A stretch of DNA of 64,000 bases from IMG/VR virus record IMGVR_UViG_3300049215_000771, positions 186,001 to 250,000 of that record; one strand, written 5' to 3'. How positions within the stretch are numbered: position 1 is the stretch's first letter; every line of letters begins with the position of its first letter. Shown here one piece after another: positions 26,940-47,662 of this stretch. Position numbers and translations under genes: made by a program. The notes below the pieces were generated by a model. The model was not told the origin of the DNA. It saw nothing but the letters and a program-made list of their open reading frames with translations, and did not search any database.

Positions 26940-27573
26940 CGATATGGAGGAGTGGGTTGAGCGAATTGAACATAAGCGCCATTATCGGACGTTGAGAAAT
27001 GCGCAACAAAAAGCCGAGAGGCTGCCCCAACGGGTGTCGCCCAATCACCCGTTAGCTGCAAACCTCTCGGCGTGCTTGAATGATACTACGATTTACCGAG
27101 GTTGTAAAGCACACGACCAGGAAATCTGAAAGAAATCCTGGTCGTGGCCGTGCGTCGAGAACCCATCCCGGTCCCCGATCCCTCCAGCCTATCCCACCAC
27201 CTGCCCCCTGTCCAGCAAAATCATCAACAATTTGACACTGTGCGTTTGTGCAGTATCAAAAATGAGGCGTCAGGTACAAAGGTTTGAAGTGGTGGTTTTA
27301 GAGATTTGTACCCTCCGGTCATTTTCTGCGCACGGATGTACACCAGGTTATTTGGGATAATGCCAGGGGGAGATTGAGGGGTGTTGCGCCGGGCTGGGGT
27401 TGGCTGGCAAAGGCTGTTTTTAGCATTTGTACAGTATTGTTTTAGGCATTTGTACCGTAGGGGTTGGCTGCGCCGGGCGTGGCTGGGGTGGGGTTGCGCC
27501 GAATTGCGTTGGGAGATTCCGAACCTTACGAGTTTGGGGCGGTCTTCCTGGCAACCCATAGGGAGGAATTTCG

Positions 27574-28665
27574 ATGTCGGTTCAACATTTCAAGGTGTTC
27601 TTCGGGCCGGACGATCCGTGGGGAGCGGTAGCGCCCACGGCGGACGAGCGCCGGGAGTTGGTGGAGAGTGGGTTTGCCGGTTTCATCGGCAACGAGCGGG
27701 CGATCAAGAAGCTGAAGGCGTCGGCGTTCGATGCCCTGGGCAAGCCCGACCATCTTTGCCGTGACCTGGCGTTCAGCATTTTCGGCCCGGCGTCGAGTGG
27801 CAAGACGACGCTGGCCCGGCTGTACGCCAAAACCGTCGATCTGCCCTTCGTGGAGGTTTCCCCGAAGGCGGTGAAGACGATGGACGACCTGTTCCGGGAG
27901 ATCGACCGGGTGTTGACGGTCGAGGGCGTGCCGGTGGTGGAAGTGGTCCGGCGCAACTACCATGTTCTGCCGCCCTGTGTGATCTTCATTGACGAGGTTC
28001 ACGCACTGGCGAAGGCAGTCGAGCAGGGCTTGCTGAAGGCGACGGAGTACAACGACGCCACGCTGGTCACGGAGTCCGGCAAAACGATCAACTGCCACAA
28101 TGTTTGCTGGATCATTGCCACGACGGACGAGGGGCGGCTGTTCGACGCATTCCGCACCCGGTTTTCGCCGGTCAACCTTCGCTATCTGAGCAAGGCGGAC
28201 ATTGCCAAGATCGTTCGCCTGGCTCACCCGGACTTCGACGAGGCGACGGCGGCGCTGGTTGCTCACTACAACAGCCGCATTCCCCGCAAGGCGTTGGAGT
28301 TCGCCCGTTACATGAAGTTGGTTCGGCAGATGGGCGCTGACCGCACCTGGGCGGACGTGGCGCAGGAAGTTGCCACGGATGAAGGGATCGACCAGTACGG
28401 CATGAGCGAGGTTCACCTTCGCATTCTGAAGGCGCTGGGCCAGGGTCCGGTGGCGGCAAACCGGATCGTGAATGTCGCAGGAGCGAAGAAGGAGGAAGTC
28501 GAGCGGTTCATCATGCCGTGGTTGCTGACGGTCACGGAAGACACGCCGGCGCTGGTCACGGTGACGAGCAGGGGATACACCATCACCGAGGCGGGCCTGG
28601 CCGAGTTGGACAAGCGAGGGATCGCCCATCGAGGGACGTTCGCCACGCCGAACTATCGCCCGTAG
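27574..28665 (+). CDS. ruvB: RuvB-like AAA+ branch-migration ATPase
   Basis: FIG.E; Walker A GPASSGKTT; Walker B FIDEVH; ATT.....DAFRTRF; C-terminal winged helix G.D..G......L....GP......RG..T. Confidence 0.8.
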   Translation: MSVQHFKVFFGPDDPWGAVAPTADERRELVESGFAGFIGNERAIKKLKASAFDALGKPDHLCRDLAFSIFGPASSGKTTLARLYAKTVDLPFVEVSPKAVKTMDDLFREIDRVLTVEGVPVVEVVRRNYHVLPPCVIFIDEVHALAKAVEQGLLKATEYNDATLVTESGKTINCHNVCWIIATTDEGRLFDAFRTRFSPVNLRYLSKADIAKIVRLAHPDFDEATAALVAHYNSRIPRKALEFARYMKLVRQMGADRTWADVAQEVATDEGIDQYGMSEVHLRILKALGQGPVAANRIVNVAGAKKEEVERFIMPWLLTVTEDTPALVTVTSRGYTITEAGLAELDKRGIAHRGTFATPNYRP

Positions 28666-28776
28666 TTCGGCGGCTGGCCGGGGGCTGCCCACTCCTGGCC
28701 TGGGCGCAATAGCCTACTGGTACAAACCTTCAAGTTGATGTTTTAGAGATTTGTACCCTACGGGCTGGAGGGAAGC

Positions 28777-28932
28777 ATGAAATACATCGTGTGGGTACGG
28801 GAGAAGGGGCGTTGGGAGCCGAACGGCGACGGGCCTTTGACGCAGAAGCAGGCCGAGCGGATTGCCAAGGAAATCCGTCAGGAGTGCAACGTGCCGACGA
28901 AGGTGTTGCCGGTGGGACAAGAACCGAAATAG
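28777..28932 (+). CDS. small hypothetical protein
   Basis: GGAGG SD after motif A. Confidence 0.6.
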   Translation: MKYIVWVREKGRWEPNGDGPLTQKQAERIAKEIRQECNVPTKVLPVGQEPK

Positions 28933-28940
28933 GAGGGGAT

Positions 28941-29141
28941 ATGGACCCTGTTGCTTGCATCGAGGAAGCCGAGGCGCAGATCGAATCCAACAACCCGGAC
29001 GATGCTGCCTGGGCGCTTCAGGACTATCGGGAGTGGCGGCGCAAGGGTGGATTCACCGACGCCGGCCTGGACGAGCGTGCCCGGATTGTCAACAAGGAAA
29101 TCAAGCAGACCGGGCATCCTGGGGTGAACCTGGGATTTTGA
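28941..29141 (+). CDS. small hypothetical protein
   Basis: AGGAGG SD. Confidence 0.65.
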   Translation: MDPVACIEEAEAQIESNNPDDAAWALQDYREWRRKGGFTDAGLDERARIVNKEIKQTGHPGVNLGF

Positions 29142-29197
29142 TGAAAGTTTCCGAACCTTGCTGGCCCGGCAAGGTCTTCCATGCGGGAGGGGACGAC

Positions 29198-29332
29198 ATG
29201 AAGAAAACGAATCGTGTGCGTAAACATCGTAGGGACAAGAACAACGGCAAGAACGGTTGGGTGGGTGGAAATCCCCGCTACGACCGTCGCAAGGCGACCG
29301 AGGGAAAGAATCGGTCGATGGGCCGCAATTAG
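29198..29332 (+). CDS. small basic protein
   Basis: after motif B. Confidence 0.55.
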   Translation: MKKTNRVRKHRRDKNNGKNGWVGGNPRYDRRKATEGKNRSMGRN

Positions 29333-29344
29333 GGAGGGGCTGCA

Positions 29345-29590
29345 ATGCCTGTTTCGTTGAATCGTGTTCTGACCGTGGCGAAGGGCAACGGGGGCTTCCT
29401 GGACCGCCTGGGCATTGAGACGATTGCCAGGGAGGACCGGCTTCGCCTGTTGCTGGTTCGGTGTGGCAATGGTCGTTTCCTGGCCCCGGCGCAGGACGTG
29501 AACCATTTCATCGCCATCATCGAGCGAGACAACCAGGACTACATTCGGGACGTGTCGCTGCCGACTTCCGACCCGATCTGGAAAACCTGA
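29345..29590 (+). CDS. hypothetical protein
   Basis: GGAGG SD; stop abuts motif B. Confidence 0.65.
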   Translation: MPVSLNRVLTVAKGNGGFLDRLGIETIAREDRLRLLLVRCGNGRFLAPAQDVNHFIAIIERDNQDYIRDVSLPTSDPIWKT

Positions 29591-29657
29591 AAGTTTCCGA
29601 ACCTTGCTGGCCCGGCAAGGTCTTCCATGCGAGTCGAGACAACCTGGATAGGGAGAA

Positions 29658-30179
29658 ATGAACATGGTCACTTTCAGCAAGGGCGACAACATCATCGACA
29701 GCCGGGACGTGATTTCCCGCATCGAGGAGTTGGAGTCCGAGCGTGAAGCCTTGTCCGATGCCGTGGACAGCGCTCGTGAGGCGTTGGAGGAACACCAAAG
29801 CAACGAGCCGGACGAGGACGCCGACGAAGAAGTACACGAAGCGTACCAGGAGAAGCTGTCGGAGTTGAAGGAAGCGCTGGTCGAGGCGGCTTCCGACCTG
29901 GACGATTGGGACGAGGACGACGACCAGGGCGGCGAGTTGAAGGAGCTTCGGGCCTTCAGCGAGGAGGGCGAGAGCGCCACGTCGGACTGGCCGCACGGCG
30001 CAATGTGCATCCTGGAAAGCTACTTCGAGGACTACTGCCAGGAGTTGCTGGCCGACATCGGCGACTTGCCGAAGGACTTGCCGCATTACATCGTGATCGA
30101 CTGGACGGCCACGGCGAAGAACCTGGAGGCCGACTATTCGAGCATCACCTGGGGCGGCGAGACGTATCTGGTCCGCTGA
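29658..30179 (+). CDS. acidic ArdA-like antirestriction (DNA mimic) protein
   Basis: very acidic; C-terminus FEDY..ELL.D.G.LP..L..YI.ID....A..L..DY resembles ArdA. Confidence 0.6.
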   Translation: MNMVTFSKGDNIIDSRDVISRIEELESEREALSDAVDSAREALEEHQSNEPDEDADEEVHEAYQEKLSELKEALVEAASDLDDWDEDDDQGGELKELRAFSEEGESATSDWPHGAMCILESYFEDYCQELLADIGDLPKDLPHYIVIDWTATAKNLEADYSSITWGGETYLVR

Positions 30180-30252
30180 TCCCGAACCTTAGACCATTCG
30201 CCCCGGTCTAAGGTATGCGTCGAGTATCCATTACCCTGGTAGGGAGAGAGTC

Positions 30253-30429: not shown

Positions 30430-30555
30430 CGTGTGGGCAACCGGCCTGGGGGATGCAGCCGCCCCCAGGCCGTTTCTTTGCGATAGGGAGCAGGTACAAA
30501 CCTTCAAGTTGTAGCTTTATAGGTTTGTACCCTACCGGCCAGGAGGTAACGGACC

Positions 30556-30714: not shown

Positions 30715-30789
30715 AAAGTTTCCGAACCTTGCTGGCCCGGCGAGGTCTTCCATGCGAGAGACGAGACAACCCCCAACGGGAGATATGGA

Positions 30790-32400
30790 ATGGCTGCTTT
30801 CCTGAAGATTCAGAATCCTGGCGTTGCTGATCCCCTGGCCTTCACCCTCCTGGGTGCTTCCACGAGCCGGTCCAGCGACAACAGCGCCACCATCGGCAAG
30901 TTCGGGTCGGGCAACAAGCACGGTGTCGCCGTGTGTCTCCGTGAGGAGTTGCCGCCCGTTGTGTTCGCCGGCACGCTCCGCATGACGTTCGGCACGACCG
31001 ACGTGAAGATGGACGCCGGCACGCACAGCAAGACGTTCGCTCGTGTGCAGGTGAAGTACGGCGGCAAGGACAAGGCCGGCGTCAACCGTTCGTCCACGGA
31101 AGACCTGGGCTATGTCCTGGAGTACGGGGCTTCCGACTGGCTGGGCATCGACCTGGCGCTTCGGGAGTTCGTGTCCAACGCCATCGACCGGGCGATTGTG
31201 GAAGGCGAGATCGCTTTCATCGCCAAGTTCGCTTTCGAGTACAACGAGCGCAACCCCGGCTTCCACGCCCTCCTGGACCAGAAGGACGCCGAGGCGGTTT
31301 CCATCTGCCACAAGGCGCTGGAAACCTACCGGCTGACGGCGCAGGACTTCAAGAACGTCCGGGTCGAGGTCGTGGAGGAGAACCAGGTCCGGGCGAAGGA
31401 CGGCTACACCACGGTTTTCGTGCCGCTGAATGCCGACGTTCTGGCGTTCTACCAGTCGCTTGGCAAGTGGTTCCTGCACTTCTCGGAGCCGGAACTGCTG
31501 AACAAGACGATTCTGCCGAAGAAGAATCGCAACCTGGGCAACCGGGTCGCAGCGGTGATCTACCGTCGTGGTGTTCGTGTTCGGGAGTTCGAGAGCAGCG
31601 ACGTTCCTTCGCTGTTCGATTACAACCTGCCGAACATCGAACTGGATGAGGCACGCAAGGCCGACGACTGGCGGATTCGGACGGCGGCGGGCAAGGCCGT
31701 CCGTGATGCCGACCAGGACACGCTTCGGGTGCTGTTCCAGTCGTTCCGCAGCAGCCAGCGCTATTGGGAACACGACTTCGACACCTACGGCCTGGAAGTG
31801 TCGTCGTGGGAGACGGACAAGCCGGAAGCGGCTGCCGCCCGTCAGACCAACTGGCAGAAGGCGTTCGAGCAGGTTTTCGACGCCAACGCTGTGATCGCCA
31901 CGGCGACGGGCGGCGAGTTTGCCGAGCGGAAGGGTTACAACGTCATCACGGCCCCGGAGCCGTTCGTCAAGGCGGCTGGCAAGCATGGCGTTCGCACCCC
32001 GGAGAAGGTGTTGACGCAGGACGACCGGGAAGGGCGAGAGATCATCGACGCCACGCCGGACGCTCTTGCCGCCCTGGACTTCGTGTGGGACGTGGTTCAG
32101 CGCTCTGGCATGACCAACGGCAAGGAGCGCCCGGCCTGCAAGGTGTTCCGCAAGATCATGTCGGGAGGGTCGCAGACGTTGGGGTTCTACCGTGACGCCA
32201 CGGTGTACATCAACGAGGACATCGCCGGCTATGGTTCGCTGACGGGCGGCTGGCAGGTGTTGACGCAGCAGCTTCTCGTGACGGCGCTGGAGGAAGTGGC
32301 CCATCACGTTACGGGGGCGACCGACAACAGCCGGGACTTCCAGGACTACGTTCTGAACCTGGCGATCAAGCTGGCGAAGGTCCAGGCCGGCTTGATCTGA
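30790..32400 (+). CDS. GHKL-type ATPase with permuted motif order and degenerate zincin-like tail
   Basis: LLGAS...IGKFGSG.K precedes DW...LREFVSNAID; C-terminal EEVAHH. Confidence 0.7.
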   Translation: MAAFLKIQNPGVADPLAFTLLGASTSRSSDNSATIGKFGSGNKHGVAVCLREELPPVVFAGTLRMTFGTTDVKMDAGTHSKTFARVQVKYGGKDKAGVNRSSTEDLGYVLEYGASDWLGIDLALREFVSNAIDRAIVEGEIAFIAKFAFEYNERNPGFHALLDQKDAEAVSICHKALETYRLTAQDFKNVRVEVVEENQVRAKDGYTTVFVPLNADVLAFYQSLGKWFLHFSEPELLNKTILPKKNRNLGNRVAAVIYRRGVRVREFESSDVPSLFDYNLPNIELDEARKADDWRIRTAAGKAVRDADQDTLRVLFQSFRSSQRYWEHDFDTYGLEVSSWETDKPEAAAARQTNWQKAFEQVFDANAVIATATGGEFAERKGYNVITAPEPFVKAAGKHGVRTPEKVLTQDDREGREIIDATPDALAALDFVWDVVQRSGMTNGKERPACKVFRKIMSGGSQTLGFYRDATVYINEDIAGYGSLTGGWQVLTQQLLVTALEEVAHHVTGATDNSRDFQDYVLNLAIKLAKVQAGLI

Positions 32401-32529
32401 TCTTTCTCCCTGGGTTGGCCCGGTGGGGGAGCAATCCCCTGCCGGGCTTTTTTGTCAGCACAGGCCAGGTACAATCCTACAAGTGGATGTTTTAGAGATT
32501 TGTACCCTACCAGTCGGGAGGAAAAAACC

Positions 32530-32622: not shown

Positions 32623-32824
32623 AAGTTTCCGAACCTTGCTGGCCCGGCGAGGTCTTCTATGCGAAGGACACAACGCCGAACGAAAAGGGGGTTAGATGCA
32701 GCTTCTCACTTGTTTAGCTGAGGCTTGTAAGGAACCATGAGCCTCGAACAAGGTTCCCCCTACGCCGCCTGCGACGGCGTAGGATTGGCCTGCGATTTCA
32801 ACAACCCATACGGAGGAAAGTTTC

Positions 32825-33379
32825 ATGGTGATGCACGGTTCCGATCACGCCCTTCGCAGTCAGTTCAAGGTGGGCGACAAGGTTTATTTCGGTCGCAAAC
32901 GGGGCGAGAAAACGCTCGGCGAGATCGTCCGCTTCGGCCCGAAGAACGCCAAGGTCAAGCAGTTGGAGGATCGGGGTTCGATTCGGGATTATCCCATCGG
33001 CACGACCTGGACGGTCCCGCTCAAGCTGCTGACGCTGGCCACGGTGCAGTTTCCCGCCGACAAGCTGCCCAGCAGCGCTCCGCCCCCGCCCGTGAAGCGG
33101 GAGCCGTTGAAGTACAACCCGTTCGCCGGCATCGACAACCTGCTCCTGGAAGCCCTGGCGTCGGCCTACAGCGGCCTCAGCCCGGAGAACCTGACCTGTG
33201 ACGGCGAGGCCAGCGCCGCCCATGTCCAGGCCACCCGGACGCACCTGAATCGTGTCATTCGTGGCTGCAAGCTGGCCCTGAACCGTGATGATCTCGACGA
33301 AGGCGAGGTCTTCACCTGGCTGATGACCAAGCGGGACTATGAGCGCCAGCGGGCCGAGCGAAAATCGGCCACGGCCTAA
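32825..33379 (+). CDS. hypothetical protein (SH3/KOW-like N-terminus)
   Basis: FKVGDKV.F..G......K..KV. Confidence 0.65.
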   Translation: MVMHGSDHALRSQFKVGDKVYFGRKRGEKTLGEIVRFGPKNAKVKQLEDRGSIRDYPIGTTWTVPLKLLTLATVQFPADKLPSSAPPPPVKREPLKYNPFAGIDNLLLEALASAYSGLSPENLTCDGEASAAHVQATRTHLNRVIRGCKLALNRDDLDEGEVFTWLMTKRDYERQRAERKSATA

Positions 33380-33448
33380 GAAATTTCCGAACCTCCGCTC
33401 GCCCCGGAGGTCTTCCTTGCGGGCAACGACAACCATAGGGAGAAGGAC

Positions 33449-33895: not shown

Positions 33896-34094
33896 CAACA
33901 ACGAAGGGAGAGGTACTGTGGGCATTCAGCAGTACAACTAACGAGGCGTTGAACCTACGCCTACAACCCAACCGGCCAGGCATCCCCTGGCCGGTTCTGC
34001 TTGCGACACCATCTTGGTACAAACCTTCAAGTTGATGTTTTAGAGGTTTGTACCCTACGAGTCGGAAGGCAAGAAACCTCATAGGGAGAACGAC

Positions 34095-34379: not shown

Positions 34380-34444
34380 AAGTTTCCGAACCTCCGCTCG
34401 CCCCGGAGGTCTTCCTTGCGAGACAACCATAGGGAGGGCGAAAG

Positions 34445-35258: not shown

Positions 35259-35328
35259 AAGTTTCCGAACCTCGCTGGCCCGGCGAGGTCTTCCTTGCGA
35301 GCAACGACAACCATAGGGAGGACTGAAC

Positions 35329-35583: not shown

Positions 35584-35651
35584 AAGTTTCCGAACCTCCG
35601 CTCGCCCCGGAGGTCTTCCTTGCGGGTAACGACAACCATAGGGAGAACGAG

Positions 35652-36363: not shown

Positions 36364-36440
36364 TTTCCGAACCTCCGCTCGCCCCGGAGGTCTTCCTTGC
36401 GAGTGACGAAACCATCAACTTGATAGGGAGGGATTGAACC

Positions 36441-36647: not shown

Positions 36648-36720
36648 GAAATTTCCGAACCTCCGCTCGCCCCGGAGGTCTTCCTTGCGAGTGATGACAA
36701 CCATAGGGAGGATTGAAATC

Positions 36721-37068: not shown

Positions 37069-37135
37069 CGAGTACGGCATGGAGCCGGGCAACTTCGCCC
37101 GGCTCTTTTTTGTGAAGCATCATAGGAGAGAAACC

Positions 37136-37453
37136 GTGTTCCCGACCCCGACCGACCGCCGAGGCGTGCATGGCGCTGCCCGGCCTGCCTTCACCGTCCA
37201 TCGCTTCAAGCGGACCATTTGCCTTCTGCTGAATGAGGAGATGGCCGAGGAGATCAACACCTTGCTGGTGGCGAACGAGCAACGGCTGGAGAACGCCCCC
37301 GGCCTGAAGCGTGTGCCTCCGTTCCTGTACGAGTTCACCACGCAGCTTCAGGAGGCGCTCGACCAGCCGCCCCCGGCCAAGGGTGAGAAGCCCGAAACGC
37401 TCGCTCCGGGCCGTCCCCGGCCTCGCCAAAACCCCGCTGTGAAGGCTGTCTGA
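37136..37453 (+). CDS. hypothetical protein
   Basis: AGGAG SD, GTG start. Confidence 0.6.
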   Translation: MFPTPTDRRGVHGAARPAFTVHRFKRTICLLLNEEMAEEINTLLVANEQRLENAPGLKRVPPFLYEFTTQLQEALDQPPPAKGEKPETLAPGRPRPRQNPAVKAV

Positions 37454-37705: not shown

Positions 37706-37878
37706 AGGATTGTACCTGCACTGTCGGCTAAAGGTTGAGTGGCCCAGCCCGGCGCAAGCTGAAGCTGGGCCTCCCATATTCTCCCAAGCAGGCCAGGTCA
37801 GCCCTGGCCTGCTTCTCCCTGCGCCCAGCCTGTACAAATCTCAAAATATCACCATTAGACCATTGTACCCTAGCGGTT

Positions 37879-38051
37879 GCCTCCGCAACGCTCTAAGCCG
37901 AGAGGCGGGTAAACCTTGAAACCTGGATGCCAGTCCTGGCGGTAGGGGTGAGCGTGATTAGGCCAATTACACCCGACTGGCTTCAATGCCTGCATCGGTC
38001 CTGGCAGACTGGTGTGCCGTGGTGGTGTGGGTTCGAGTCCCACCGGAGGCT
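37879..38051 (+). ncRNA. tRNA-like RNA (acceptor stem and T arm with ~140-nt insert)
   Basis: GCCTCCG (37879-85) pairs with CGGAGGC (38044-50); T arm GTGGG-TTCGAGT-CCCAC; 5' end 7-8 nt after TACCCT of motif A. Confidence 0.7.
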
Positions 38052-38145
38052 GCAATTTTCTTTGGGATTTTGCGAACCTTGAAGACTTGCCAGCGTCTTC
38101 TATGCGTAACGAGTCGAAACCATCAACCTGTAGGGAGAATCGAAC

Positions 38146-38490: not shown

Positions 38491-38796
38491 GTGGCTGCCG
38501 CTTTGGACAAAGAAATCAGCTTCCACCTTGACCGGGCCGCAACGCTGGCCCGTGCTGAGGTCGAGCGCCTGGCCCGCAAGCTGCTCCGGGAACACCCCAA
38601 CCTTGAAGCCTTCATCATGGCGATGGGGTTGGCGACGTTCAGCGTCAAAGGCCAGGCCGACAGCCTGGCCCTGTACGAACGGAAGTATTTCAAGCCCCTG
38701 GAAGACTTCATTGTGAAGTGGGACAGCGCCCTGGGGCTGACGGGTGATCCCATGTGGATTGAAGGGCCGGACGGCGAGATCAAAACGGAGTGGTAG
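38491..38796 (+). CDS. hypothetical protein
   Basis: ORF with SD. Confidence 0.65.
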   Translation: MAAALDKEISFHLDRAATLARAEVERLARKLLREHPNLEAFIMAMGLATFSVKGQADSLALYERKYFKPLEDFIVKWDSALGLTGDPMWIEGPDGEIKTEW

Positions 38797-38848
38797 TTAG
38801 AGGTTTGTACCCTACAACCTGGGCAACGAACCATAGGGAGACAAGACC

Positions 38849-39091: not shown

Positions 39092-39160
39092 AAGTTTCCG
39101 AACCTCCGCTCGCCCCGGAGGTCTTCCTTGCGAGCAACGACAACCATAGGGAGACAAGTC

Positions 39161-39640: not shown

Positions 39641-39774
39641 CGTACACTAAGACTTGGGGGTGGGTGGATAGTTTGCAAAAGCCCTGGGCGCAAGTCCAGG
39701 GCGAACCCCCACTGCGTTAAGCCTTTGTACCCTCCAGGATGGGACGAAGGGCATCACAAAGGGAGGATGAGGAA

Positions 39775-40041: not shown

Positions 40042-40045
40042 ACGA

Positions 40046-40130: not shown

Positions 40131-40265
40131 AAACTGGTCCTGCAAACAGGGTAAGTGGGGCGGCAGCGGGCCGTTCCCCACCAGTTTTTTGCGACTATAG
40201 CCCGGTACAAAGGTCAAGAGCTATATCTTTGACCTTTGTACCCTATGGGGCAAAGGAGGGCTGCG

Positions 40266-40562
40266 ATGGAAACTTTCGATAAGGCCGAATGGCGGCGACA
40301 AGGGGGCATGACCCCGCACGGTCGCTACGTTCCGACAACCAGCACAGGGCGCAAGGTTGTGGCGAAAGCACACCGGCCACCCCTGAAGGGTGAGGTTTAC
40401 CTGAAGCCTTCGGGTCGGCGTGGCATCTACCTGGTGTTGACTGCTCAGAACGACTTCGCCCGGCGTTCGTACACCATCGTTCGTGTGGTCAAGGGCGAGA
40501 GCGAGGCAAGGGCGCATTGGGAACAGGCCCGGCGTGACTACCTCCGAATTACTGGAAGATAA
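40266..40562 (+). CDS. hypothetical basic protein
   Basis: after motif A; stop abuts motif B. Confidence 0.65.
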   Translation: METFDKAEWRRQGGMTPHGRYVPTTSTGRKVVAKAHRPPLKGEVYLKPSGRRGIYLVLTAQNDFARRSYTIVRVVKGESEARAHWEQARRDYLRITGR

Positions 40563-40613
40563 TTCCGAACCTTGCACGCCCAGCGAGGTCTTCCTTGCGA
40601 GGAGGGCAGAACG

Positions 40614-40844: not shown

Positions 40845-41344
40845 ACGTGGAACTTGTGAAGCGTCTGTTCGCCCACTTCGCCCCCGCCCCCGAAGTCAAG
40901 ATCGACAAGTACAGCGAGGATGGCTGTTGCCCTGCCATCATCATCGGCCCCTTCACCATCAGTCAGTCGCTTACCGTCGTCAAGGGGCTGAAGGGCGACC
41001 ACGAGGTTCCCAACTACAGCCTGGACGTTCACGTTGGCGACGGCGACATTATCGACCTGGCGACTGCCACGAACTTCGCCGACGTGGTTGTGGCTGCCGT
41101 CGAGAACTACGCCGGCTGGCTGGCACGGGCTGAACTGGACCGCATCGCTGACGACGCCTATGCCGCTGACCTGGAGAGCGAGCGTCTGGCCTTGCAAGCC
41201 GCCTTCAACGAGGGGCTGGAATACTACAGGACGACTGCCCCCGGCGAGCGTAGCAAGGACGCCAACCCCTACCCCCACGGCATCGAGCATTACTACAAGT
41301 GGGCGTCCGGCTACAGCCAGGGCGAGGCGGAAGCGGTGTTTTGA
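40841..41344 (+). CDS. hypothetical protein
   Basis: ATGA overlap. Confidence 0.7.
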   Translation: MNVELVKRLFAHFAPAPEVKIDKYSEDGCCPAIIIGPFTISQSLTVVKGLKGDHEVPNYSLDVHVGDGDIIDLATATNFADVVVAAVENYAGWLARAELDRIADDAYAADLESERLALQAAFNEGLEYYRTTAPGERSKDANPYPHGIEHYYKWASGYSQGEAEAVF

Positions 41345-41460
41345 CCTTTGTACCCTGTCGGTTGTCGAGGCCGGGCCGGACGAAAAAAGTTTCCGAACCT
41401 TCAACGTCCGGCCCGGTCTTCCTGGTGGGCAACGAACTCTTCAACGAAAGGCAGGTTGCG

Positions 41461-42117: not shown

Positions 42118-42239
42118 GCTAGTAGCAGGGACAACCAGGAGCAGCGACGGCTGACTCCTGGCCCCTGCGAACGCTGCGTTAGACCATTGTACCCTAGTTC
42201 GATGTGAGCTATATCTTCAACCTGGATATGGAGAAAGTC

Positions 42240-42887: not shown

Positions 42888-43209
42888 CACGACAAGCCCC
42901 AGGCTGGCCCGGCCTGGGGCATTTTGGGAAATCCCCATCAGGTACAAACTTTCAAGTTGATGTTTTAGGCCATTGTACCCTAGCGGTTGGCCCGATGGCT
43001 GCCGGTGGCACGGTGGCATCGGACAACCTTCTGACGGCTCTAGGGGTAAGGGGCCGTATGGGGTTGCTGTGCTTGTGCGTTCGTCGCCACAACGACGCAT
43101 CGGCCTGCAATCTTTGCAACCATCCGTCAGAATTCTTGAAAGTTTCCGAACCTTGTTGGTTCGGCGCAGTCTTCCTTGCGGGTAGGACAGTCATACGGAG
43201 AATCGAGTC

Positions 43210-43575: not shown

Positions 43576-43788
43576 TCGGAAGGCCAGGGTCGCCCACCCT
43601 GGCCTTTGTTGGTAATACCCTACAGGTACAAAGGCTGAAGCGTTGCTTTAGAGGTTTGTACCCTAGTGGTCGGGTGAAAACCCTCGCAACAACAATCCTG
43701 GGCGGCGAGCGCCGGCCCTTGTAAGTTTCCGAACCTTGTGGTCTTGTGAAGCGTCTTCCCTGCGAAGCATACGGAAAGGACAATAACC

Positions 43789-44532
43789 ATGCTGACCTAC
43801 ACGCAAGCCGTCGCCAAGCTGGGCAATCGGGAGCGTAAGAAGCTCGCCAGCAACACCTACCTGGAGCGCAACGGCGAGCATACCATCAACGTCGTGCTGC
43901 ACCGCACCGCCATCGTCCAGATTCACGACAACGGCACTTACACGCTCAACAGCGGGGGCTGGCGCACCGTCACGACGAAAGCCCGCATCAACGACTATAG
44001 CCCCGCCAGGCTACACCAGAGCAACAACATCTGGTATGTCGGCAATGCCATTTTCCATGATGGCATCGTCGTGGACGGCAACGGCACGCCGACTGTCGAA
44101 ACGGCCAACGTCGCCGAGACTGTGAAGGCCAAGCGAGCGCTGGATCGCAAGGTCAACGCCTACATCAAGGCTTTCGCTGCCGATGCCGTGGCGAATGGGG
44201 GCTTGACCGCTCCCAGCAATGGCGACTGCTGGGGCTGCCTGTTCAAGCGGGACAGCGCCAATGGCGAGCAGGGCCGGCTGTTCAGCAAGGGCGTGGACGT
44301 TCACGCCGACAACCCGATGGGATTCGACCATTTGCTACAGCACATGGAGGAGAATTACTTCGTGCCGTCCTTGCTCCACAAGGCGATTGTGGCGCACGGC
44401 TACGTCAACCCTGGCATCATCTGGGCGCATATCGACAGCGACATCAAGGCGGGTCGCACCGATAGCCTGATCCGAGAACTACGCTTCTACTTCACCCGCC
44501 TGAAGCCCGAACTGCTGAAGCTGGCTGCCTGA
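43789..44532 (+). CDS. conserved phage hypothetical protein
   Basis: LH.TAIV ... LNSGGW.T.TTK.RIN. Confidence 0.7.
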   Translation: MLTYTQAVAKLGNRERKKLASNTYLERNGEHTINVVLHRTAIVQIHDNGTYTLNSGGWRTVTTKARINDYSPARLHQSNNIWYVGNAIFHDGIVVDGNGTPTVETANVAETVKAKRALDRKVNAYIKAFAADAVANGGLTAPSNGDCWGCLFKRDSANGEQGRLFSKGVDVHADNPMGFDHLLQHMEENYFVPSLLHKAIVAHGYVNPGIIWAHIDSDIKAGRTDSLIRELRFYFTRLKPELLKLAA

Positions 44533-44601
44533 AATTTGTGAAGGGCGATCTTTAGGGCTTTGTACCCTAGAGGTCGCCCTACTTTCACCAACGAGGTCAA
44601 C

Positions 44602-44922
44602 ATGACGAATCAAGAAGTCCTGGAACTGGCAACCTTGCGTCAACGTGGTCAAGCCGACAGCGATGAAGTGGGCGTTGACATTCGCACGCATCATCCGACG
44701 CTAGGGCATCAGGGCGGGTATCTGACCGTCGATGAAGCCGGCGAGAGTGTCAGCTTCCACTATGACGATCTATGGTTCACTGGCACGGGTTGGGAGTCGG
44801 AAGATAATCTCGGCCTCTACAACGAAGACGGCGACCGCAATGAAGATGCCGAAGTGCCCGAAGTGAGCGCAGCCGAATTCTCCGCTTGGTTCACGGGCGC
44901 TGACTGGAAGCTGCTCAACTAG
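44602..44922 (+). CDS. acidic hypothetical protein
   Basis: GAGG SD after motif A half. Confidence 0.65.
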   Translation: MTNQEVLELATLRQRGQADSDEVGVDIRTHHPTLGHQGGYLTVDEAGESVSFHYDDLWFTGTGWESEDNLGLYNEDGDRNEDAEVPEVSAAEFSAWFTGADWKLLN

Positions 44923-45015
44923 CTGGACAGGCCAGGGCTGACCCGCCCTGGCCCTTGTTGGCGGACAGCACCAGGTACAAACTTTCAAGTTGTAGCTTTA
45001 GACCATTGTACCTTA

Positions 45016-45315
45016 GTGGTCGTCCGACAAACAACTCCCCCTGACGGGGGAAACGCCGAGAGTCAAGAGGGAGGGATCGAAAGTGCCCCCGCAAGGGGCC
45101 GACCCGGAATAAGCGTTGCGGAGTAACCGGATGCAGTCTGCCTGGTCCTAACGGATAATGAGTAGCTACCCCAGGCCAACGCAGTCTCGACGCAAGCGAC
45201 GAAGAAGGGCAATCCTGAAGCCTTGAACGGGCGACTAAGCCGAAAGGCAGTCAGTCACCGGCTTACAACACGGTGCGACGAAGGGAGCAGGCAGGCCGCT
45301 GCTCCCTTCGTTCTT
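45016..45315 (+). ncRNA. candidate ~300-nt structured ncRNA
   Basis: between two motif A copies, no ORF, several GNRA hairpins, terminal 13-bp hairpin. Confidence 0.6.
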
Positions 45316-45409
45316 CAACCCAAGGTCCGGTACAATCCTTCAAGTTGATGATTTAAGCCTTTGTACCCTAACGGCTGTCGCCCGACACCTTCACTCAGGA
45401 GCCTTGACC

Positions 45410-45736
45410 ATGCGTTGCGAAGACTTCCCCTGCTGCGGCCACGAACCCGGTTGCTGCCCGAACTTCGACGAGGCGGGCCGGCAGACCGACATGGTTTGCA
45501 CCTGTGGCGCTCGCCTCCCCATCACGTCTCGCTACTCCATCTGTGAGGCGTGCCTCCGGGCCGGCGACGAGGACTTCGACGAGCCGCCCTTCGACGACGA
45601 GGACTTCGACGACGAGCCGGACCCGTTCCACGGCGACGACGCCGCAGCGGACGCCGATGCCCTGGCCTCCGCTGGCTGGGGCACGGATGAGGACTACGGC
45701 GGATACGAGGACTTCGGCGACTATTGGGGCGATTGA
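45410..45736 (+). CDS. Cys-rich/acidic small protein
   Basis: RCEDFPCCG..CC; DADALASAGWGTDEDYG. Confidence 0.7.
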   Translation: MRCEDFPCCGHEPGCCPNFDEAGRQTDMVCTCGARLPITSRYSICEACLRAGDEDFDEPPFDDEDFDDEPDPFHGDDAAADADALASAGWGTDEDYGGYEDFGDYWGD

Positions 45737-45871
45737 TCGCCTGGCCAGGGCAGCCCAGCCCTGGCCTTTTTTGTTCGGTATAGGCCAGGTACAAACCTTC
45801 AAGTTGATGATTTAAGCCTTTGTACCCTAGTGGGCGGAAGGTCCGAATCTCTCAACCCTGCGAGGTGCGCT

Positions 45872-46660
45872 ATGCAGTTCACGAACTCCCGTACCGGCGA
45901 AGTCATCAACACCAACCTGGACCGTGCGGGCATCCTGGCCGCTTTCGGCGAAGTCGCTCAGGCCGATAGCTGGTTGTGGTATTGGCTGGTCAAGACCATC
46001 AACGATGCGGCCAGCGCCGCCGGCAACAAGGACATGATCGCTTTCCTGGCCGATTCCTTCGTGTTCGCCGTGGGCATGGGCTTGAAAGCCCCCATGATTC
46101 GCCTGGGCTTCCAGGAGCGCCGCTACAAGATTTACCTCTCCCGTCGTGGTACACTGTGCTTCAAGTCGGGCGCTGTCCGGCCTGGCACGTCCGATCCCAT
46201 CGGCGATGAGGAATACGTCGGCTGCCTGTATCAAGGGCGCTTCCTGCCCAACAAGGAGCGCCGCCCGCTGGCCGTGGAAAACGAATTCTTCGCTCGCCTG
46301 AGCGCCGACCCGGTTGGCTTCATGGCCGCTTGCTCGAAAGACATGAATCGCTGTTGCTACTGCAACCTCCCCCTGGAGGATGAGCGTAGCAAGGAAGTCG
46401 GCTACGGCAAGATTTGTGCAGAGCGCTGGGGCTTGCCCTGGGGCAAGGGCAGCGGCTCTCACGTCGTCAGCTTCGCCCAGCTTTGGGAACGGGCTGGCAC
46501 GACGGAAGCCCGCAACATCAGGGGCTTGTGCCAGGCCATTCGCCAGCAACCCCGCCAGGAAGAACTCTGGCTTATCCTGGGCGATGCCCTGGAGGAAGCG
46601 GGCTGGACCGGCAAGAAGCCGCAAGCCCCGCAGGGCAGCGTAGTCGTGCCCGCCCTGTAA
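45872..46660 (+). CDS. DUF6011-like zinc-binding protein with C-terminal TIGR02996-like domain
   Basis: CCYC..PL.D.RS...GYG.ICA..WGLPWG; L..AIR..P..E..WL.L.D.LEE.G. Confidence 0.65.
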   Translation: MQFTNSRTGEVINTNLDRAGILAAFGEVAQADSWLWYWLVKTINDAASAAGNKDMIAFLADSFVFAVGMGLKAPMIRLGFQERRYKIYLSRRGTLCFKSGAVRPGTSDPIGDEEYVGCLYQGRFLPNKERRPLAVENEFFARLSADPVGFMAACSKDMNRCCYCNLPLEDERSKEVGYGKICAERWGLPWGKGSGSHVVSFAQLWERAGTTEARNIRGLCQAIRQQPRQEELWLILGDALEEAGWTGKKPQAPQGSVVVPAL

Positions 46661-46771
46661 CGCTGAAGGGGGCTGACTTCATGTCAGCCCCCTTTTCTTC
46701 AACCTGTTGCTTTAGGCATTTGTACCTTAGTGGTTGTCGCCCGACACACTCAACACTGCGAGGTCAGAATC

Positions 46772-47164
46772 ATGGGCATCCGTCTCTACCCGAACACGAA
46801 GAACGTCGCCTCCCTGGAAACCATCTGCGGCGTGCCCGCTGGCACGGCTGCCCGCCTGGAGGCCGTGGAAGCCCGCCACGCCGAAGAGTTGAAGCCGCTG
46901 GCCGGCAAAGCCCCCTGGGAGCGCCAGGACGTTGAATATCGCCAGTGGTGCGAAATCAACGATGATGCGGCGCTGGGCGATTACCACGCCTTCCTGTTGT
47001 ACGGTTGGGGCAAATTCAACGACCCGCACGGCGTTACGGTGCGGGACGGCGAGCGCACCTGTTCGGGAAGCGTCAGCGATCCCGTCAAGGTCGTGCTGCT
47101 GTTGCGACCGAACGGGCTGGACGAAACGCACCTGGCCCTGATGGAAGGGGTTCACTGGTGCTGA
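46772..47164 (+). CDS. hypothetical protein
   Basis: GAGG SD after motif A half. Confidence 0.7.
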   Translation: MGIRLYPNTKNVASLETICGVPAGTAARLEAVEARHAEELKPLAGKAPWERQDVEYRQWCEINDDAALGDYHAFLLYGWGKFNDPHGVTVRDGERTCSGSVSDPVKVVLLLRPNGLDETHLALMEGVHWC

Positions 47165-47273
47165 GTCACCAGGCCGCAGGGGGCTTCAACCCCCTGCGGC
47201 TTTTTTAGTCCGACTTCTTTAGACCATTGTACCCTAGTGGTTGTCGCCCGACACCTTCAACCCGGAGAGTTCG

Positions 47274-47618
47274 ATGAAGCGTTTCACCCTGTCCGCCCTC
47301 GCCCTGCTCGCCATCGCCATCGCCGCCGTCCTGTTCTTCGTCAAGCCGCTCGGCAACAACAGCGCCAGCGCTCAGTCGCCCGTCGTGGCGCAGCCGCTCG
47401 TTGCCAACACCAGCGCCACCACGAGCGCCACGCCGATCACGCCGGCGCAGTATCATGCCCAGCGGATCGCCCAGCAGCAAGCCGCCGCAGCGCAACAGCG
47501 TATCATCGGCCTGCAACGGGCGCAGATTCGCAACGCCCAGCAGCAAGAGGCGCAACAGCGCTTCTTGAACTATCGCTGGGCATTGCAACAGCAGCGCTTG
47601 CAACGTGGTCAACCATGA
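47274..47618 (+). CDS. secreted/membrane-anchored Gln-rich protein
   Basis: N-terminal signal/TM segment. Confidence 0.6.
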   Translation: MKRFTLSALALLAIAIAAVLFFVKPLGNNSASAQSPVVAQPLVANTSATTSATPITPAQYHAQRIAQQQAAAAQQRIIGLQRAQIRNAQQQEAQQRFLNYRWALQQQRLQRGQP

Positions 47619-47627
47619 TGCAATGAT

Positions 47628-47662
47628 AAGCGCTCAGCGCCATGCAAAGGCGCTGAGCGCTT
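47628..47662. terminator. 14-bp inverted repeat at convergent block boundary
   Basis: AAGCGCTCAGCGCC-N7-GGCGCTGAGCGCTT. Confidence 0.75.

What the first reader, a model, noticed from the sequence alone, without database searches (positions are those of the whole stretch)
27273..47662. 20-kb array of ~40 small genes built as repeat-delimited expression cassettes
Nearly every gene or gene pair has its own unit: [terminator hairpin]-[motif A and/or motif B]-[ACAACCATAGGGAG leader]-ORF. In 14 of 19 motif B copies the previous stop codon lies immediately upstream of the repeat (e.g. TGA-AAGTTTCCGAACC), as if ORFs are exchanged between repeats with no spare DNA. The module is GC-richer than its flanks. 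Its cargo is typical counter-defence or host-takeover material: ArdA-like, SAM-lyase-like, AT-hook, nuclease, acidic proteins and ncRNAs. It resembles the PeSL promoter-stem-loop cassettes that shuffle genes in T4-type phages, but uses two different, much more numerous elements and is headed by a RuvB-like ATPase. It may be an undescribed modular gene-shuffling system.
Basis: partly seen in the sequence, partly recalled or inferred. Interest (0 to 1): 0.9.

Follow-up and report, generated by a model that had tools for sequence, protein, structure and literature searches.

The report
Megaphage early-gene array with promoter cassettes
A 20-kb block of about 40 small genes in a 673-kb uncultivated megaphage is wired by two families of repeated promoter/terminator cassettes, much like the PeSL cassettes of T4-type phages; this gives a first regulatory map for the clade, but evidence that the repeats shuffle genes is only indirect.

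Summary
The repeats are real and far beyond chance. Motif A (TTTAG-N4-TTGTACCCTA) occurs 20 times and motif B (TTTCCGAACC-N16-GTCTTCC) 18 times. All copies are on the + strand and intergenic, between 27.3 and 47.7 kb. The window belongs to a 673-kb megaphage scaffold.

Relatives, found through the RuvB-like ATPase, carry the same layout: ATPase, then 12-20+ kb of small + strand genes. Each lineage has its own versions of both motifs.

In 68 B copies from four genomes, the boxes GAAC and GTCT stay exactly 17 nt apart. The stem-loop between them changes sequence and register with compensatory substitutions. B copies elsewhere in the genome keep the boxes, a ribosome-binding site and an ATG, but mostly lack the hairpin.

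I read B as an ECF-sigma-like promoter with an added attenuator hairpin, placed 4-11 nt after the previous stop codon. I read A as a compact phage-specific promoter that follows strong terminators. This matches the published PeSL anatomy except for the promoter type.

Gene content turns over heavily between relatives on a largely collinear backbone. The only base-resolved indel ends in two Shine-Dalgarno boxes.

The claimed ArdA, SAM-lyase and nuclease cargo is not supported. An active shuffling machine is not shown. Verdict: new variant of a known kind.

The parts
27273..47662 (+). Whole array: about 40 small + strand genes and 3 ORF-less units, with 20 motif A and 18 motif B copies
   Evidence: GC 0.60 and GC3 0.81 against flanks 0.52 and 0.645
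26722..27573 (+). 850-nt non-coding head of the array. It holds a perfect 24-bp inverted repeat (26872-26939), two A copies and one B copy
   Evidence: relatives have a similar 0.5-1.3 kb gap before the ATPase
27574..28665 (+). RuvB-like AAA+ ATPase (363 aa), first gene of the array in all relatives examined
   Evidence: Pfam AAA, RuvB_N and RuvB_C; PDB RuvB E=3e-16; 559 homologues
30790..32400 (+). Conserved 536-aa protein of unknown function, second core gene of the array
   Evidence: 717 homologues; no Pfam hit; no PDB sequence or fold match
27297..27315 (+). motif A copy
27441..27459 (+). motif A copy
28742..28760 (+). motif A copy, 16 nt before the ATG; hairpin 28670-28707 upstream
30516..30534 (+). 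motif A copy; terminator hairpin 30442-30472 upstream
32491..32509 (+). motif A copy; terminator 32417-32448 plus T-run upstream
34039..34057 (+). motif A copy; hairpin 33970-33996 upstream
37854..37872 (+). motif A copy heading the tRNA-like RNA; hairpin 37786-37814 upstream
38796..38814 (+). motif A copy without left arm
39716..39734 (+). motif A copy without left arm
40227..40245 (+). motif A copy; with its left arm (from 40205) it forms a 14-bp perfect inverted repeat
41339..41357 (+). motif A copy, followed by B at 41390
42178..42196 (+). motif A copy; hairpin 42135-42161 upstream
42964..42982 (+). motif A copy heading an ORF-less unit; terminator 42896-42920 upstream
43647..43665 (+). 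motif A copy; terminator 43579-43607 upstream
44551..44569 (+). motif A copy
44997..45015 (+). motif A copy heading the conserved ORF-less unit; terminator 44930-44953 upstream
45352..45370 (+). motif A copy; hairpin 45277-45312 upstream
45811..45829 (+). motif A copy; terminator 45743-45766 plus T6 upstream
46711..46729 (+). motif A copy; terminator 46665-46695 upstream
47218..47236 (+). motif A copy; terminator 47171-47202 upstream
27516..27547 (+). motif B copy before the ATPase; follows A rather than an ORF; no spacer hairpin
29148..29179 (+). motif B copy with hairpin. The orthologous copy in L089 and L090 carries a compensatory T-A to C-G change
29594..29625 (+). motif B copy with hairpin, starting directly after a TGA stop
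30719..30750 (+). motif B copy with hairpin (one G-U pair)
32626..32657 (+). motif B copy with hairpin
33384..33415 (+). motif B copy with hairpin and full leader
34383..34414 (+). motif B copy with hairpin and leader
35262..35293 (+). motif B copy with hairpin and leader
35587..35618 (+). motif B copy with hairpin and leader; shares 69 nt (at most 4 mismatches) with the copy at 39095
36364..36395 (+). motif B copy with hairpin
36652..36683 (+). motif B copy with hairpin and leader
38069..38100 (+). motif B variant (GCGAACC) after the tRNA-like RNA
39095..39126 (+). motif B copy with hairpin and leader
40562..40593 (+). motif B copy with hairpin
41390..41421 (+). motif B copy after A; no local hairpin
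43143..43174 (+). motif B copy after an ORF-less unit
43726..43758 (+). motif B variant with an 18-nt gap, after A
21839..21871 (+). motif B-type promoter outside the array, before a PAPS-reductase-domain gene; no hairpin
37081..37106 (+). intrinsic-terminator-like hairpin plus T6 inside the array, not followed by A or B
47628..47662 (+). last hairpin; end of the array, facing convergent - strand genes
37873..38056 (+). tRNA-like RNA candidate (acceptor-like stem and T-arm), an A-headed cargo unit without an ORF
42983..43140 (+). ORF-less A-headed unit, structured (z = -2.5)
45016..45330 (+). ORF-less A-headed unit, 74% identical over 221 nt to a gene-free stretch of relative L109

Best explanation
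The region is the hyperplastic small-gene block of a ~673-kb megaphage, probably expressed early for host takeover. It is transcribed from two classes of repeated regulatory cassettes.

Class A is a compact, roughly 19-24-nt promoter (TTTAG-N4-TTGTACCCTA, with transcription probably starting just after CCCTA). It sits right behind strong GC-rich terminator hairpins and opens about 20 short transcription units.

Class B is an internal promoter with an ECF-sigma-like -35 box (GAAC) and -10 box (GTCT) held exactly 17 nt apart. It is placed 4-11 nt after the stop codon of the preceding gene and 22-47 nt before the next ATG. A GC-rich stem-loop is built into its spacer. I infer that this stem-loop attenuates or insulates transcription coming from upstream, as in PeSLs.

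The 'leader' is a CA-rich 5' UTR ending in an extended Shine-Dalgarno sequence (ATAGGGAG or ATAAGGAG).

Because the cassettes share 50-69 nt of near-identical sequence, they are also passive substrates for homologous recombination. This probably contributes to the high whole-gene turnover seen between relatives.

Shown: the anatomy, its conservation, the covariation and the gene turnover. Inferred: promoter activity, which polymerase or sigma reads each class, the attenuator role, early timing, and recombination at the repeats.
For: - Strand, position and spacing. All copies are on the + strand and intergenic. GAAC-N17-GTCT occurs 16 times on the + strand against 2 on the - strand, and 0-4 times at other spacings. 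Distances to stop and start codons are tight.
- Conservation of B. In 68 B copies from the window, L073/L109, L075/L110 and L077, only the boxes (t)GAAC(c) and (g)GTCT plus a downstream TGCG are invariant. The spacer is lineage-specific: identity is 0.54-0.76 within a genome and 0.24-0.49 between genomes.
- Hairpin independent of the boxes. The hairpin sits in two different registers relative to the boxes. So the boxes are read at a fixed distance, independently of the hairpin.
- Hairpin covariation. 89.6% and 93.3% of cells are paired, against 25-49% when the partner is slid. Compensatory changes occur at 4 and at 2 pairs. One orthologous T-A to C-G swap is seen against L089 and L090.
- Copies outside the array. 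B copies at contig positions about 99, 150 and 155 kb and at window 21842 keep the boxes, SD and ATG, but 4 of 5 lack the hairpin.
- Where the hairpin occurs in the window. The canonical hairpin is predicted in the 12 array copies that directly follow a stop codon, and not in the 4 of the 5 copies following A or non-coding DNA that were folded (43726 was judged by eye only).
- ECF resemblance. ECF promoters share an AAC -35 motif and a CGT(C/A) -10 motif with 14-17 bp spacers (PMC5758882). L077 has CGTCT.
- Not sigma-70. Sigma-70-type sites are at chance level: 4 found against 3.2 expected.
- Conservation of A. The A core is kept in 89 copies from 7 genomes with GC 0.40-0.60. 15 of 20 window copies follow a strong hairpin. 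The ATG lies 16-43 nt after it.
- L113 has its own A and B versions with the same placement rules.
- The PeSL anatomy is the same.
- Gene turnover between relatives. Shared near-identical stretches between cassettes.
- The GC3 shift suggests a separate expression class.
Against: - No transcript data: no start site or termination has been measured.
- No sigma factor or RNA polymerase gene lies in the 64-kb window. The rest of the genome could not be read.
- The B hairpins lack a proper U-run, so they are not canonical terminators.
- G-T wobbles outnumber A-C mismatches 23 to 10 in the stems. This fits an RNA-level role as well as an attenuator role.
- 12 of 20 A copies carry an upstream inverted arm (GGTACAAA), up to 14 bp, that a simple promoter does not need.
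- Early timing is inferred only from gene size, position and codon usage.
- Positional clustering of B variants is only marginal (Mantel p = 0.05).
Confidence: 0.68

Rival explanations
1. Motif B, and perhaps motif A, works on RNA rather than as a promoter. The array would be transcribed as long polycistronic RNAs. The conserved hairpin with its flanks would then be a processing, stabilising or translational-control site bound by a phage or host RNA-binding protein or RNase, like the RNase III sites between T7 early genes.
For: - The hairpin shows compensatory changes.
- G-U wobbles on the sense strand outnumber A-C mismatches 23 to 10.
- In the window the hairpin occurs where B follows an ORF.
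- B hairpins have no U-run.
Against: - The invariant letters are the single-stranded flanks GAAC and GTCT, fixed 17 nt apart, while the hairpin shifts register by 5 nt between lineages.
- Copies outside the array keep the boxes without any hairpin, yet still precede SD and ATG.
- Units that follow strong terminators still need a promoter, and A is the only conserved element there.
Confidence: 0.12
2. The repeats are the recombination sites of a dedicated, integron-like or otherwise active gene-shuffling system. The conserved RuvB-like ATPase at the head would help to exchange ORFs between hairpin repeats.
For: - The hairpin repeat lies immediately after the stop codon of most genes.
- The head gene is a RuvB-like ATPase in every relative.
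- Gene content is patchy and some genes are translocated between relatives.
- Cassettes are homogenised within each genome.
Against: - No recombinase, integrase or transposase family is found in the window.
- The backbone of shared genes is largely collinear.
- The only base-resolved indel ends in SD boxes, consistent with ordinary short-homology recombination.
- There are no paralogues or duplicated cassettes.
- B-type boxes work as ordinary gene-proximal elements outside the array.
- RuvB-like AAA+ proteins have many other roles, and no RuvA or RuvC partner was seen.
Confidence: 0.07
3. Motif A is mainly an operator: a palindromic binding site (GGTACAAA ... TTTGTACC) for a phage regulator that switches the units on or off. 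The real promoter would be something less conserved nearby.
For: - 12 of 20 copies in the window, and copies in L073, L075 and L093, have the inverted left arm. Some form perfect 10-14-bp palindromes.
Against: - 8 of 20 copies in the window and nearly all copies in L092, L093 and L094 lack the left arm, yet sit at the same distance from SD and ATG.
- Between the terminator T-run and the SD nothing else is conserved.
- The conserved block is asymmetric: TTTAG lies upstream and CCCTAG downstream.
Confidence: 0.08
4. The repeats are selfish miniature mobile elements (MITE- or REP-like) that have spread through intergenic DNA and have no regulatory role.
For: - Many near-identical copies with hairpin potential.
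Against: - There is a strict single orientation and a fixed distance to stop and start codons.
- There are no target-site duplications or terminal inverted repeats around the units.
- The same two-class system occupies equivalent positions in diverged relatives with different repeat sequences.
Confidence: 0.02

Closest known systems
PeSL (promoter-early stem-loop) cassettes of T4-type phages (Arbiol et al. 2010, PMC2839356; Comeau et al. 2014, PMC4122927)
   Same: - Dense repeats in a hyperplastic block of small ORFan genes.
- Same order of parts: upstream stop codon in an A/T-rich stretch, -35 box, stem-loop between or overlapping the boxes, -10 box, SD, ATG (one search compared).
- Composite terminator/promoter logic.
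- A PeSL crossover was mapped between the SD and -10 boxes. The one indel mapped here ends in SD boxes.
   Different: - The boxes are not the sigma-70 consensus but GAAC-N17-GTCT.
- There are two distinct cassette classes, A and B, with different placement rules.
- The host genome is a 673-kb megaphage clade rather than a T4-type phage.
- Each lineage has its own homogenised version.
- Promoter, terminator and mini-circle activities are untested here.
ECF (group IV) sigma-factor promoters, such as the sigmaE/AlgU and B. subtilis sigmaW/X/M types (PMC5758882)
   Same: - AAC-containing -35 box.
- GTC/CGTC-type -10 box.
- Rigid 16-17-nt spacing.
- A/T-rich stretch upstream.
   Different: - No cognate sigma gene has been identified.
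- The -10 box reads GGTCT in three of the four lineages rather than CGTC.
- A conserved stem-loop fills the spacer.
- The usage is about 20 promoters in a phage gene array.
Integron gene cassettes (ORF plus attC hairpin, headed by IntI and Pc)
   Same: - An array of small single-gene units.
- A hairpin-forming repeat directly after each ORF.
- One conserved head gene.
   Different: - No tyrosine recombinase.
- The hairpin is 21-28 nt and sits inside promoter boxes, so it is not an attC site.
- The units carry their own promoters.
Single-subunit phage RNA polymerase promoters (T7, T3, SP6 type). This is from my own knowledge and is only a lead.
   Same: - Motif A is one contiguous conserved block of about 19-24 nt with no separate -35 box.
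- It starts with an A/T-rich TTTAG(GT) and ends in ...CTA followed by G.
- It sits immediately after terminators.
   Different: - It is about 3 nt longer than SP6- or T7-type promoters.
- The sequence differs.
- It often has an inverted upstream arm.
- No polymerase gene could be looked for.

Membership tests
PeSL cassettes | Located in a hyperplastic region of small, poorly conserved genes | tested here: met
   There are 40 genes, mean length 129 aa. Only 16-18 have homologues in L109, 8 in L110 and 7 in L113.
PeSL cassettes | Stop codon of the upstream gene in an A/T-rich stretch at the 5' edge | tested here: met
   13 of 19 B copies have a stop codon 4-11 nt before GAAC, within (TGA)AAGTTT. 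The same holds in L073, L075, L077 and L113.
PeSL cassettes | Strong sigma-70-consensus -35 and -10 boxes (host-read early promoter) | tested here: not met
   The sigma-70 scan finds 4 sites against 3.2 expected, and none lies in the cassettes. The boxes are GAAC and GTCT.
PeSL cassettes | Stable stem-loop between or overlapping the boxes | tested here: met
   Mean folding z-score is -2.0 to -5.2. 89.6% and 93.3% of cells are paired, with compensatory changes.
PeSL cassettes | Shine-Dalgarno sequence and start codon at the 3' edge | tested here: met
   GGGAG or GGAGG lies 5-9 nt before the ATG. The distance from GTCT to the ATG is 22-47 nt.
PeSL cassettes | Indels or replacements between close relatives whose crossovers lie inside the cassettes | tested here: inconclusive
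   One case only. The 158-bp, 51-aa gene (28774-28931) is absent from L090, and both ends lie in SD boxes, just after motif A on the left. No other close relatives were available.
PeSL cassettes | Measured promoter and terminator activity; excised mini-circles | not testable with these tools
   This needs reporter assays, inverse PCR or raw reads.
ECF sigma-dependent promoter | -35 box with an AAC core and -10 box with a CGT/GTC core, 14-17 nt apart | tested here: met
   GAAC-N17-GTCT (16 nt between the CGAACCT and TCTTC type boxes) is invariant in 68 copies. L077 reads CGTCT. Consensus taken from PMC5758882.
ECF sigma-dependent promoter | A cognate ECF sigma factor encoded by the phage or available in the host | not testable with these tools
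   No sigma family is found among 130 window proteins. The other roughly 600 kb of the scaffold and the host genome could not be read.
ECF sigma-dependent promoter | Transcription start about 6-9 nt after the -10 box | not testable with these tools
   No transcript data. A conserved TGCG(A/G) lies at that distance.
Integron | IntI tyrosine recombinase next to the array | tested here: not met
   No integrase or recombinase family is found in the window.
Integron | attC sites (55-140 bp imperfect palindromes) bounding promoterless cassettes | tested here: not met
   The repeats are 32-nt promoter-like units with a 7-10-bp stem, and each unit has its own boxes and SD.
Single-subunit RNAP (T7/SP6-type) promoter, for motif A | One contiguous conserved block of about 20 bp ending at the start site | tested here: inconclusive
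   The block tTAG-N5-TGTACCCTAG is conserved in 89 copies. The start site is unknown.
Single-subunit RNAP (T7/SP6-type) promoter, for motif A | Phage-encoded single-subunit RNA polymerase | not testable with these tools
Intrinsic terminators (hairpins upstream of motif A) | GC-rich stem-loop followed by a U-run | tested here: met
   15 of 20 A copies have a hairpin of -15 kcal/mol or stronger upstream. Clear T-runs follow at 32448, 45766, 47201 and 37106; others have short T-rich tails.

The most novel reading that the evidence does not exclude
The cassettes are more than promoters. The hairpin placed right after each stop codon, together with the conserved RuvB-like ATPase at the head of every array, would form an active cassette-exchange system, a phage analogue of an integron. 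It would swap host-takeover or counter-defence genes between co-infecting megaphages. The lineage-specific homogenisation of the repeats would be its footprint.
Probability: 0.07. Interest if true: 0.85.

Novelty: new variant of a known kind. Interest (0 to 1): 0.45.

Why it matters
Nothing is known experimentally about how megaphages of 500-700 kb organise transcription. This analysis yields concrete, testable promoter models for a widespread uncultivated clade:
- The clade is large. The search reported 559 ATPase homologues (E <= 1e-20) and 717 homologues of the 536-aa protein (E <= 1e-30) among the 8,000 best candidates scored.
- A two-tier wiring rule emerges: terminator plus A opens a unit, and stop codon plus B re-initiates inside it.
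- The small-gene block uses clearly different codons (GC3 0.81 against 0.65) from the rest of a genome that carries its own aaRS and ribosomal-protein genes.
- PeSL-style composite cassettes are not restricted to T4-type phages or to sigma-70 promoters. This supports the idea that such cassettes are a general solution for insulating accessory phage genes and making them exchangeable.
- The cargo is almost entirely of unknown function and is a reasonable hunting ground for host-takeover or anti-defence genes. That remains a hypothesis, not a finding.

Tried and rejected
- Megablast of the whole array against 50,697 phage records found no match.
- By tblastn, the only phage-record relative of the 536-aa protein, and the only close one of the ATPase (50%; the other 24 hits are 23-27% RuvB-type), is the 595-kb LR756511.1. 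It has 35-50% identity, the two genes lie 82 kb apart, and the 41 kb read around its ATPase lacks both motifs.
- Scans of IMG/VR and of JGI metagenome contigs for exact motif B or A patterns found multiple hits only on the source contig and single chance hits elsewhere.
- The genome-collection scan found only the MAG contig already in hand.
- No tRNA and no Rfam family at gathering score. At E < 1 only two chance-level hits appeared.
- The standard sigma-70 promoter and terminator scans were at or below shuffle level. Many terminator tails are short, so I scored hairpins separately.
- The 536-aa core protein has no Pfam hit and no PDB sequence match. A confident AlphaFold model (pLDDT 83) has no PDB fold match with E below 0.1.
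- The ArdA, SAM-lyase and nuclease cargo claim finds no family support even at E = 0.1 for the acidic proteins.
- There are no paralogues inside any array, which argues against tandem duplication as the source of the units.
- Positional clustering of B spacer variants is only marginal.
- A search for strain variants failed. L111 and L112 are 100% identical to the window. L078 against L077 and L074 against L073 differ by 1-2 events, none in a cassette.
- A literature search for the A core sequence returned only unrelated papers.
- One relative locus (P0248) came back without DNA.
- A T7-like reading of the leader (ACGAC..ATAGGGAGA) was rejected. GGGAG sits at SD distance from every ATG, and relatives have ATAAGGAG, the extended SD, at that place.

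Full report
**Origin of the window.** The window is part of IMG/VR contig IMGVR_UViG_3300049215_000771 (532,729 bp; window coordinate + 186,000 = contig coordinate). The same sequence, 100% identical, lies on a 673,178-bp ENA/JGI/NCBI scaffold and on a 23.9-kb contig from another sample. The flanks encode a ribosomal L7/L12 C-terminal domain, two aminoacyl-tRNA synthetases and a DHODH-like protein. This is the repertoire described for huge phages (PMC7162821). For the 536-aa protein the only relative in GenBank phage records, and for the ATPase the only close one, is the 595-kb uncultured phage LR756511.1; both matches are distant.

**Checking the observation.** A self-trained gene caller gives 40 + strand genes between 27574 and 47618, with convergent - strand genes starting at 47876.
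- Motif A (TTTAG-N4-TTGTACCCTA) has 20 copies, all + strand and all within 27.3-47.3 kb.
- Motif B, reduced to GAAC-N17-GTCT, has 16 + strand hits against 2 on the - strand, and 0-4 at any other spacing. Two more copies have an 18-nt gap.
- The 14-nt leader has 6 exact copies against 0.3 expected.
- 13 of 19 B copies begin 4-11 nt after the stop codon of the preceding gene. The ATG follows the GTCT box by 22-47 nt once three starts are corrected with the public gene calls.
- 15 of 20 A copies have a strong GC-rich hairpin 25-100 nt upstream; coordinates are.
- The array has GC 0.60 against 0.52 in the flanks. The difference lies in codon usage: GC3 is 0.81 against 0.645.

The architecture is therefore confirmed. 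The cargo description is not. Pfam and PHROGs scans of all 40 proteins show only the RuvB-like AAA+ ATPase, DUF6011, Kyano_Gp96 and two very weak hits. There is no ArdA, SAM lyase or nuclease. Several proteins are very acidic. Three A-headed units have no ORF.

**Relatives.** The ATPase has hundreds of metagenomic homologues at 57-96% identity. I fetched contexts at 96% (L089), 91% (L090), 78% (L073/L109), 72% (L075/L110) and 70% (L077). I also fetched 17 IMG/VR loci at 42-66% and L113. In all those examined, the ATPase is followed by a one-directional run of small genes (12.5 kb in L110, 17.4 kb in L109, more than 20 kb in L113). In the two arrays read to their end (L109, L110) the run finishes at convergent genes. 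The GC excess of the array recurs in L073, L077, L093, L094 and L097.

**What motif B is.** L073, L075 and L077 each have 15-20 copies of their own B version.
- Across 68 copies from four genomes, the invariant letters are (t)GAAC(c) and (g)GTCT, always 17 nt apart, plus a TGCG about 6 nt further on. The 16-17 nt between the boxes is lineage-specific: identity is 0.54-0.76 within genomes and 0.24-0.49 between them.
- The spacer always folds into a GC-rich stem-loop (mean z -2.0 to -5.2). Its register relative to the boxes differs by 5 nt between the window/L110 pair and the L109/L077 pair.
- Named-structure counts give 89.6% and 93.3% paired cells, against 25-49% for slid partners. Compensatory changes occur at 4 and at 2 pairs.
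- The orthologous copy at 29148 differs from L089 and L090 by a T-A to C-G double change.
- Boxes read at a fixed distance regardless of where the hairpin sits are what a -35/-10 promoter predicts. The letters fit the ECF-sigma class: an AAC -35 motif, a CGT(C) -10 motif and 14-17-nt spacers (PMC5758882). Sigma-70-type sites are at chance.
- Four further exact B copies lie at about 99, 150 and 155 kb on the contig, and one at window 21842. Each precedes an SD and ATG, but four of the five have no hairpin.
- Within the array, the canonical hairpin is predicted in the 12 copies that directly follow a stop codon, and not in the 4 folded copies that follow A or non-coding DNA (43726 was judged by eye only).

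I therefore treat the hairpin as a separate add-on whose job concerns transcription or translation arriving from upstream. An attenuator or insulator is most likely, although it lacks a U-run. The excess of G-T over A-C mismatches in the stems (23 to 10) shows that the sense strand matters, and so leaves an RNA-level role open.

**What motif A is.** The block tTAG-N5-TGTACCCTAG is conserved in 89 copies from seven genomes whose GC ranges from 0.40 to 0.60. In L092 and L093 it is the main per-gene element (18-19 copies). L113 has a variant, TAGGTCTTAGGGTGTACCTGAAA, in 17 copies, often right after T-runs.
- In the window it lies 16-43 nt before the ATG or before a B copy. In most cases it follows a terminator so closely that no separate -35 box can exist.
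- It is the only conserved element between terminator and SD, so it is most simply a compact promoter read by a phage-specified factor.
- Its resemblance in form to T7/SP6-type promoters is only a lead.
- Twelve copies carry an inverted left arm, up to 14 bp and with covarying positions. I cannot explain this arm.

**The leader.** GGGAG lies at SD distance from every ATG. Relatives have ATAAGGAG, the extended SD, at the same place, preceded by a CA-rich stretch. It is a strong ribosome-binding leader. Its long identity among six or seven cassettes reflects their shared recent ancestry.

[quoted passage not shown] They act as promoter plus terminator/attenuator and are concentrated in hyperplastic regions. 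Crossovers were mapped even between the SD and -10 boxes (PMC2839356; PMC4122927). Motif B fits every structural point except the sigma-70 consensus. The terminator-plus-A units are a second composite type. L113 shows the same design with TAA as part of its repeat.

**Is it a gene-shuffling system?**
- Against L109, 16-18 of 40 window genes have homologues. These are collinear except for three or four genes (28777, 28941, 34095 weakly, 45410).
- L110 and L113 share 7-8 genes, with more rearrangement. One example is the 184-aa gene at 32825: it is next to the 536-aa gene here but 7 kb downstream, beyond the DUF8033 gene, in L113.
- That gene is absent from the complete arrays of the closer relatives L109 and L110, so its distribution is patchy.
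- No array contains paralogues.
- The only indel I could resolve to the base is the 51-aa gene at 28777-28932, present in the window and in L089 and absent from L090. Both ends fall in the SD boxes GGAGGG. This is recombination in the repeated regulatory DNA, but not in motif A or B.
- The cassettes offer 50-69-nt near-identical stretches, and their spacers are homogenised within each genome. Both are compatible with gene conversion among copies.
- Positional clustering of variants is marginal.
- No strain-level variants exist in the data I could reach.
- No recombinase is encoded in the window.

So turnover is high and the repeats are plausible passive substrates, as for PeSLs. An active system headed by the ATPase remains speculation.

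**Verdict.** The best-supported reading is a two-class promoter/terminator cassette system that wires a hyperplastic, probably early, small-gene block of a megaphage clade. It is a new variant of the PeSL kind, with ECF-like and phage-specific promoters instead of sigma-70 ones. Interest is moderate.

Noticed in passing
window 37873-38056 (+): A roughly 175-nt tRNA-like RNA candidate directly after an A copy. It has an acceptor-like stem (GCCTCCG / CGGAGGC) and a T-arm (GTGGG-TTCGAGT-CCCAC), followed by ATTTTCTTT. ARAGORN does not call it, and Rfam gives only a weak mascRNA-like hit (E = 0.39). L092 and L093 carry similar uncalled T-arm elements just before an A copy. L092 has two real tRNA-Glu genes and L098 a tRNA-Met in their arrays.
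   Followed up: partly
window 45016-45330 (+); L109 13685-13900: An A-headed, terminator-bounded unit without an ORF. It is 74% identical over 221 nt to a gene-free stretch at the corresponding place in relative L109. It is a conserved ncRNA candidate. A second ORF-less unit at 42983-43140 folds well (z = -2.5).
   Followed up: partly
window 27574-47618 compared with the flanks: Array genes have GC3 0.81 against 0.645 in both flanks, and GC1 and GC2 are also higher. The array is GC-richer than its upstream flank in five relatives too. This may reflect host-like codon usage for genes expressed before the phage's own translation genes act.
   Followed up: partly
L094 11060-11774 and 13003-13118 (IMGVR_UViG_3300037189_025222); the same in L097: Directly after the ATPase gene of this GC-0.40 relative there are more than 20 head-to-tail 35-bp units, AGTGAACCA-N9-GATTTTACAT-N8. 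This is a tandem array of B-type -35-like boxes with no genes between them. It could be a decoy or titration site, or a CRISPR-like array. It remains unexplained.
   Followed up: no
window 26722-27573: An 850-nt non-coding head of the array. It holds a perfect 24-bp GC-rich inverted repeat (26872-26895 / 26916-26939) and two other inverted repeats. It lies where the strongly negative GC skew of the left flank (-0.2 to -0.3) ends. It could be an origin, a boundary terminator or an entry-end control region.
   Followed up: no
window 28720-28760, 40205-40245 and 10 other A copies; L073 11139-11177; L075 4521-4570: Many A copies have an inverted left arm (GGTACAAA...), giving palindromes of 8-14 bp arms around a 10-22-nt loop. 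Non-conserved positions covary. In L075 the full 10-mer is mirrored. The function is unknown; an operator, a cruciform or a bidirectional element are possibilities.
   Followed up: partly
L075/L091 (JAYVUD010000138.1, GCA_043788335.1): The 48-kb relative contig is binned in a MAG named Chloracidobacterium sp. This is a weak hint that this megaphage clade infects Acidobacteriota. It may also be a binning artefact.
   Followed up: no
window 24-212 (+), 59364-60536 (-), 62120-63673 (-), 47876-48637 (-), 21907-22926 (+): The flanks encode a ribosomal L7/L12 C-terminal domain, a TyrRS/TrpRS-type and a class II (Asp/Lys/Asn-type) aminoacyl-tRNA synthetase, a DHODH-like protein and a PAPS-reductase-domain protein. 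The last is driven by a hairpin-less B promoter.
   Followed up: partly
window 37081-37136: The gene at 37136 follows a clean terminator (stem plus T6) with no A or B copy in between. This is the only unit in the array without an obvious promoter.
   Followed up: no
L113 (ENA ERZ27280223 k141_2388023): This relative has replaced both motifs by its own versions: TAAGTGAAAGT-N13-GGGTATTGT (23 copies, with the TAA stop inside the repeat) and TAGGTCTTAGGGTGTACCTGAAA (17 copies). Both promoter classes therefore co-evolve lineage by lineage.
   Followed up: partly
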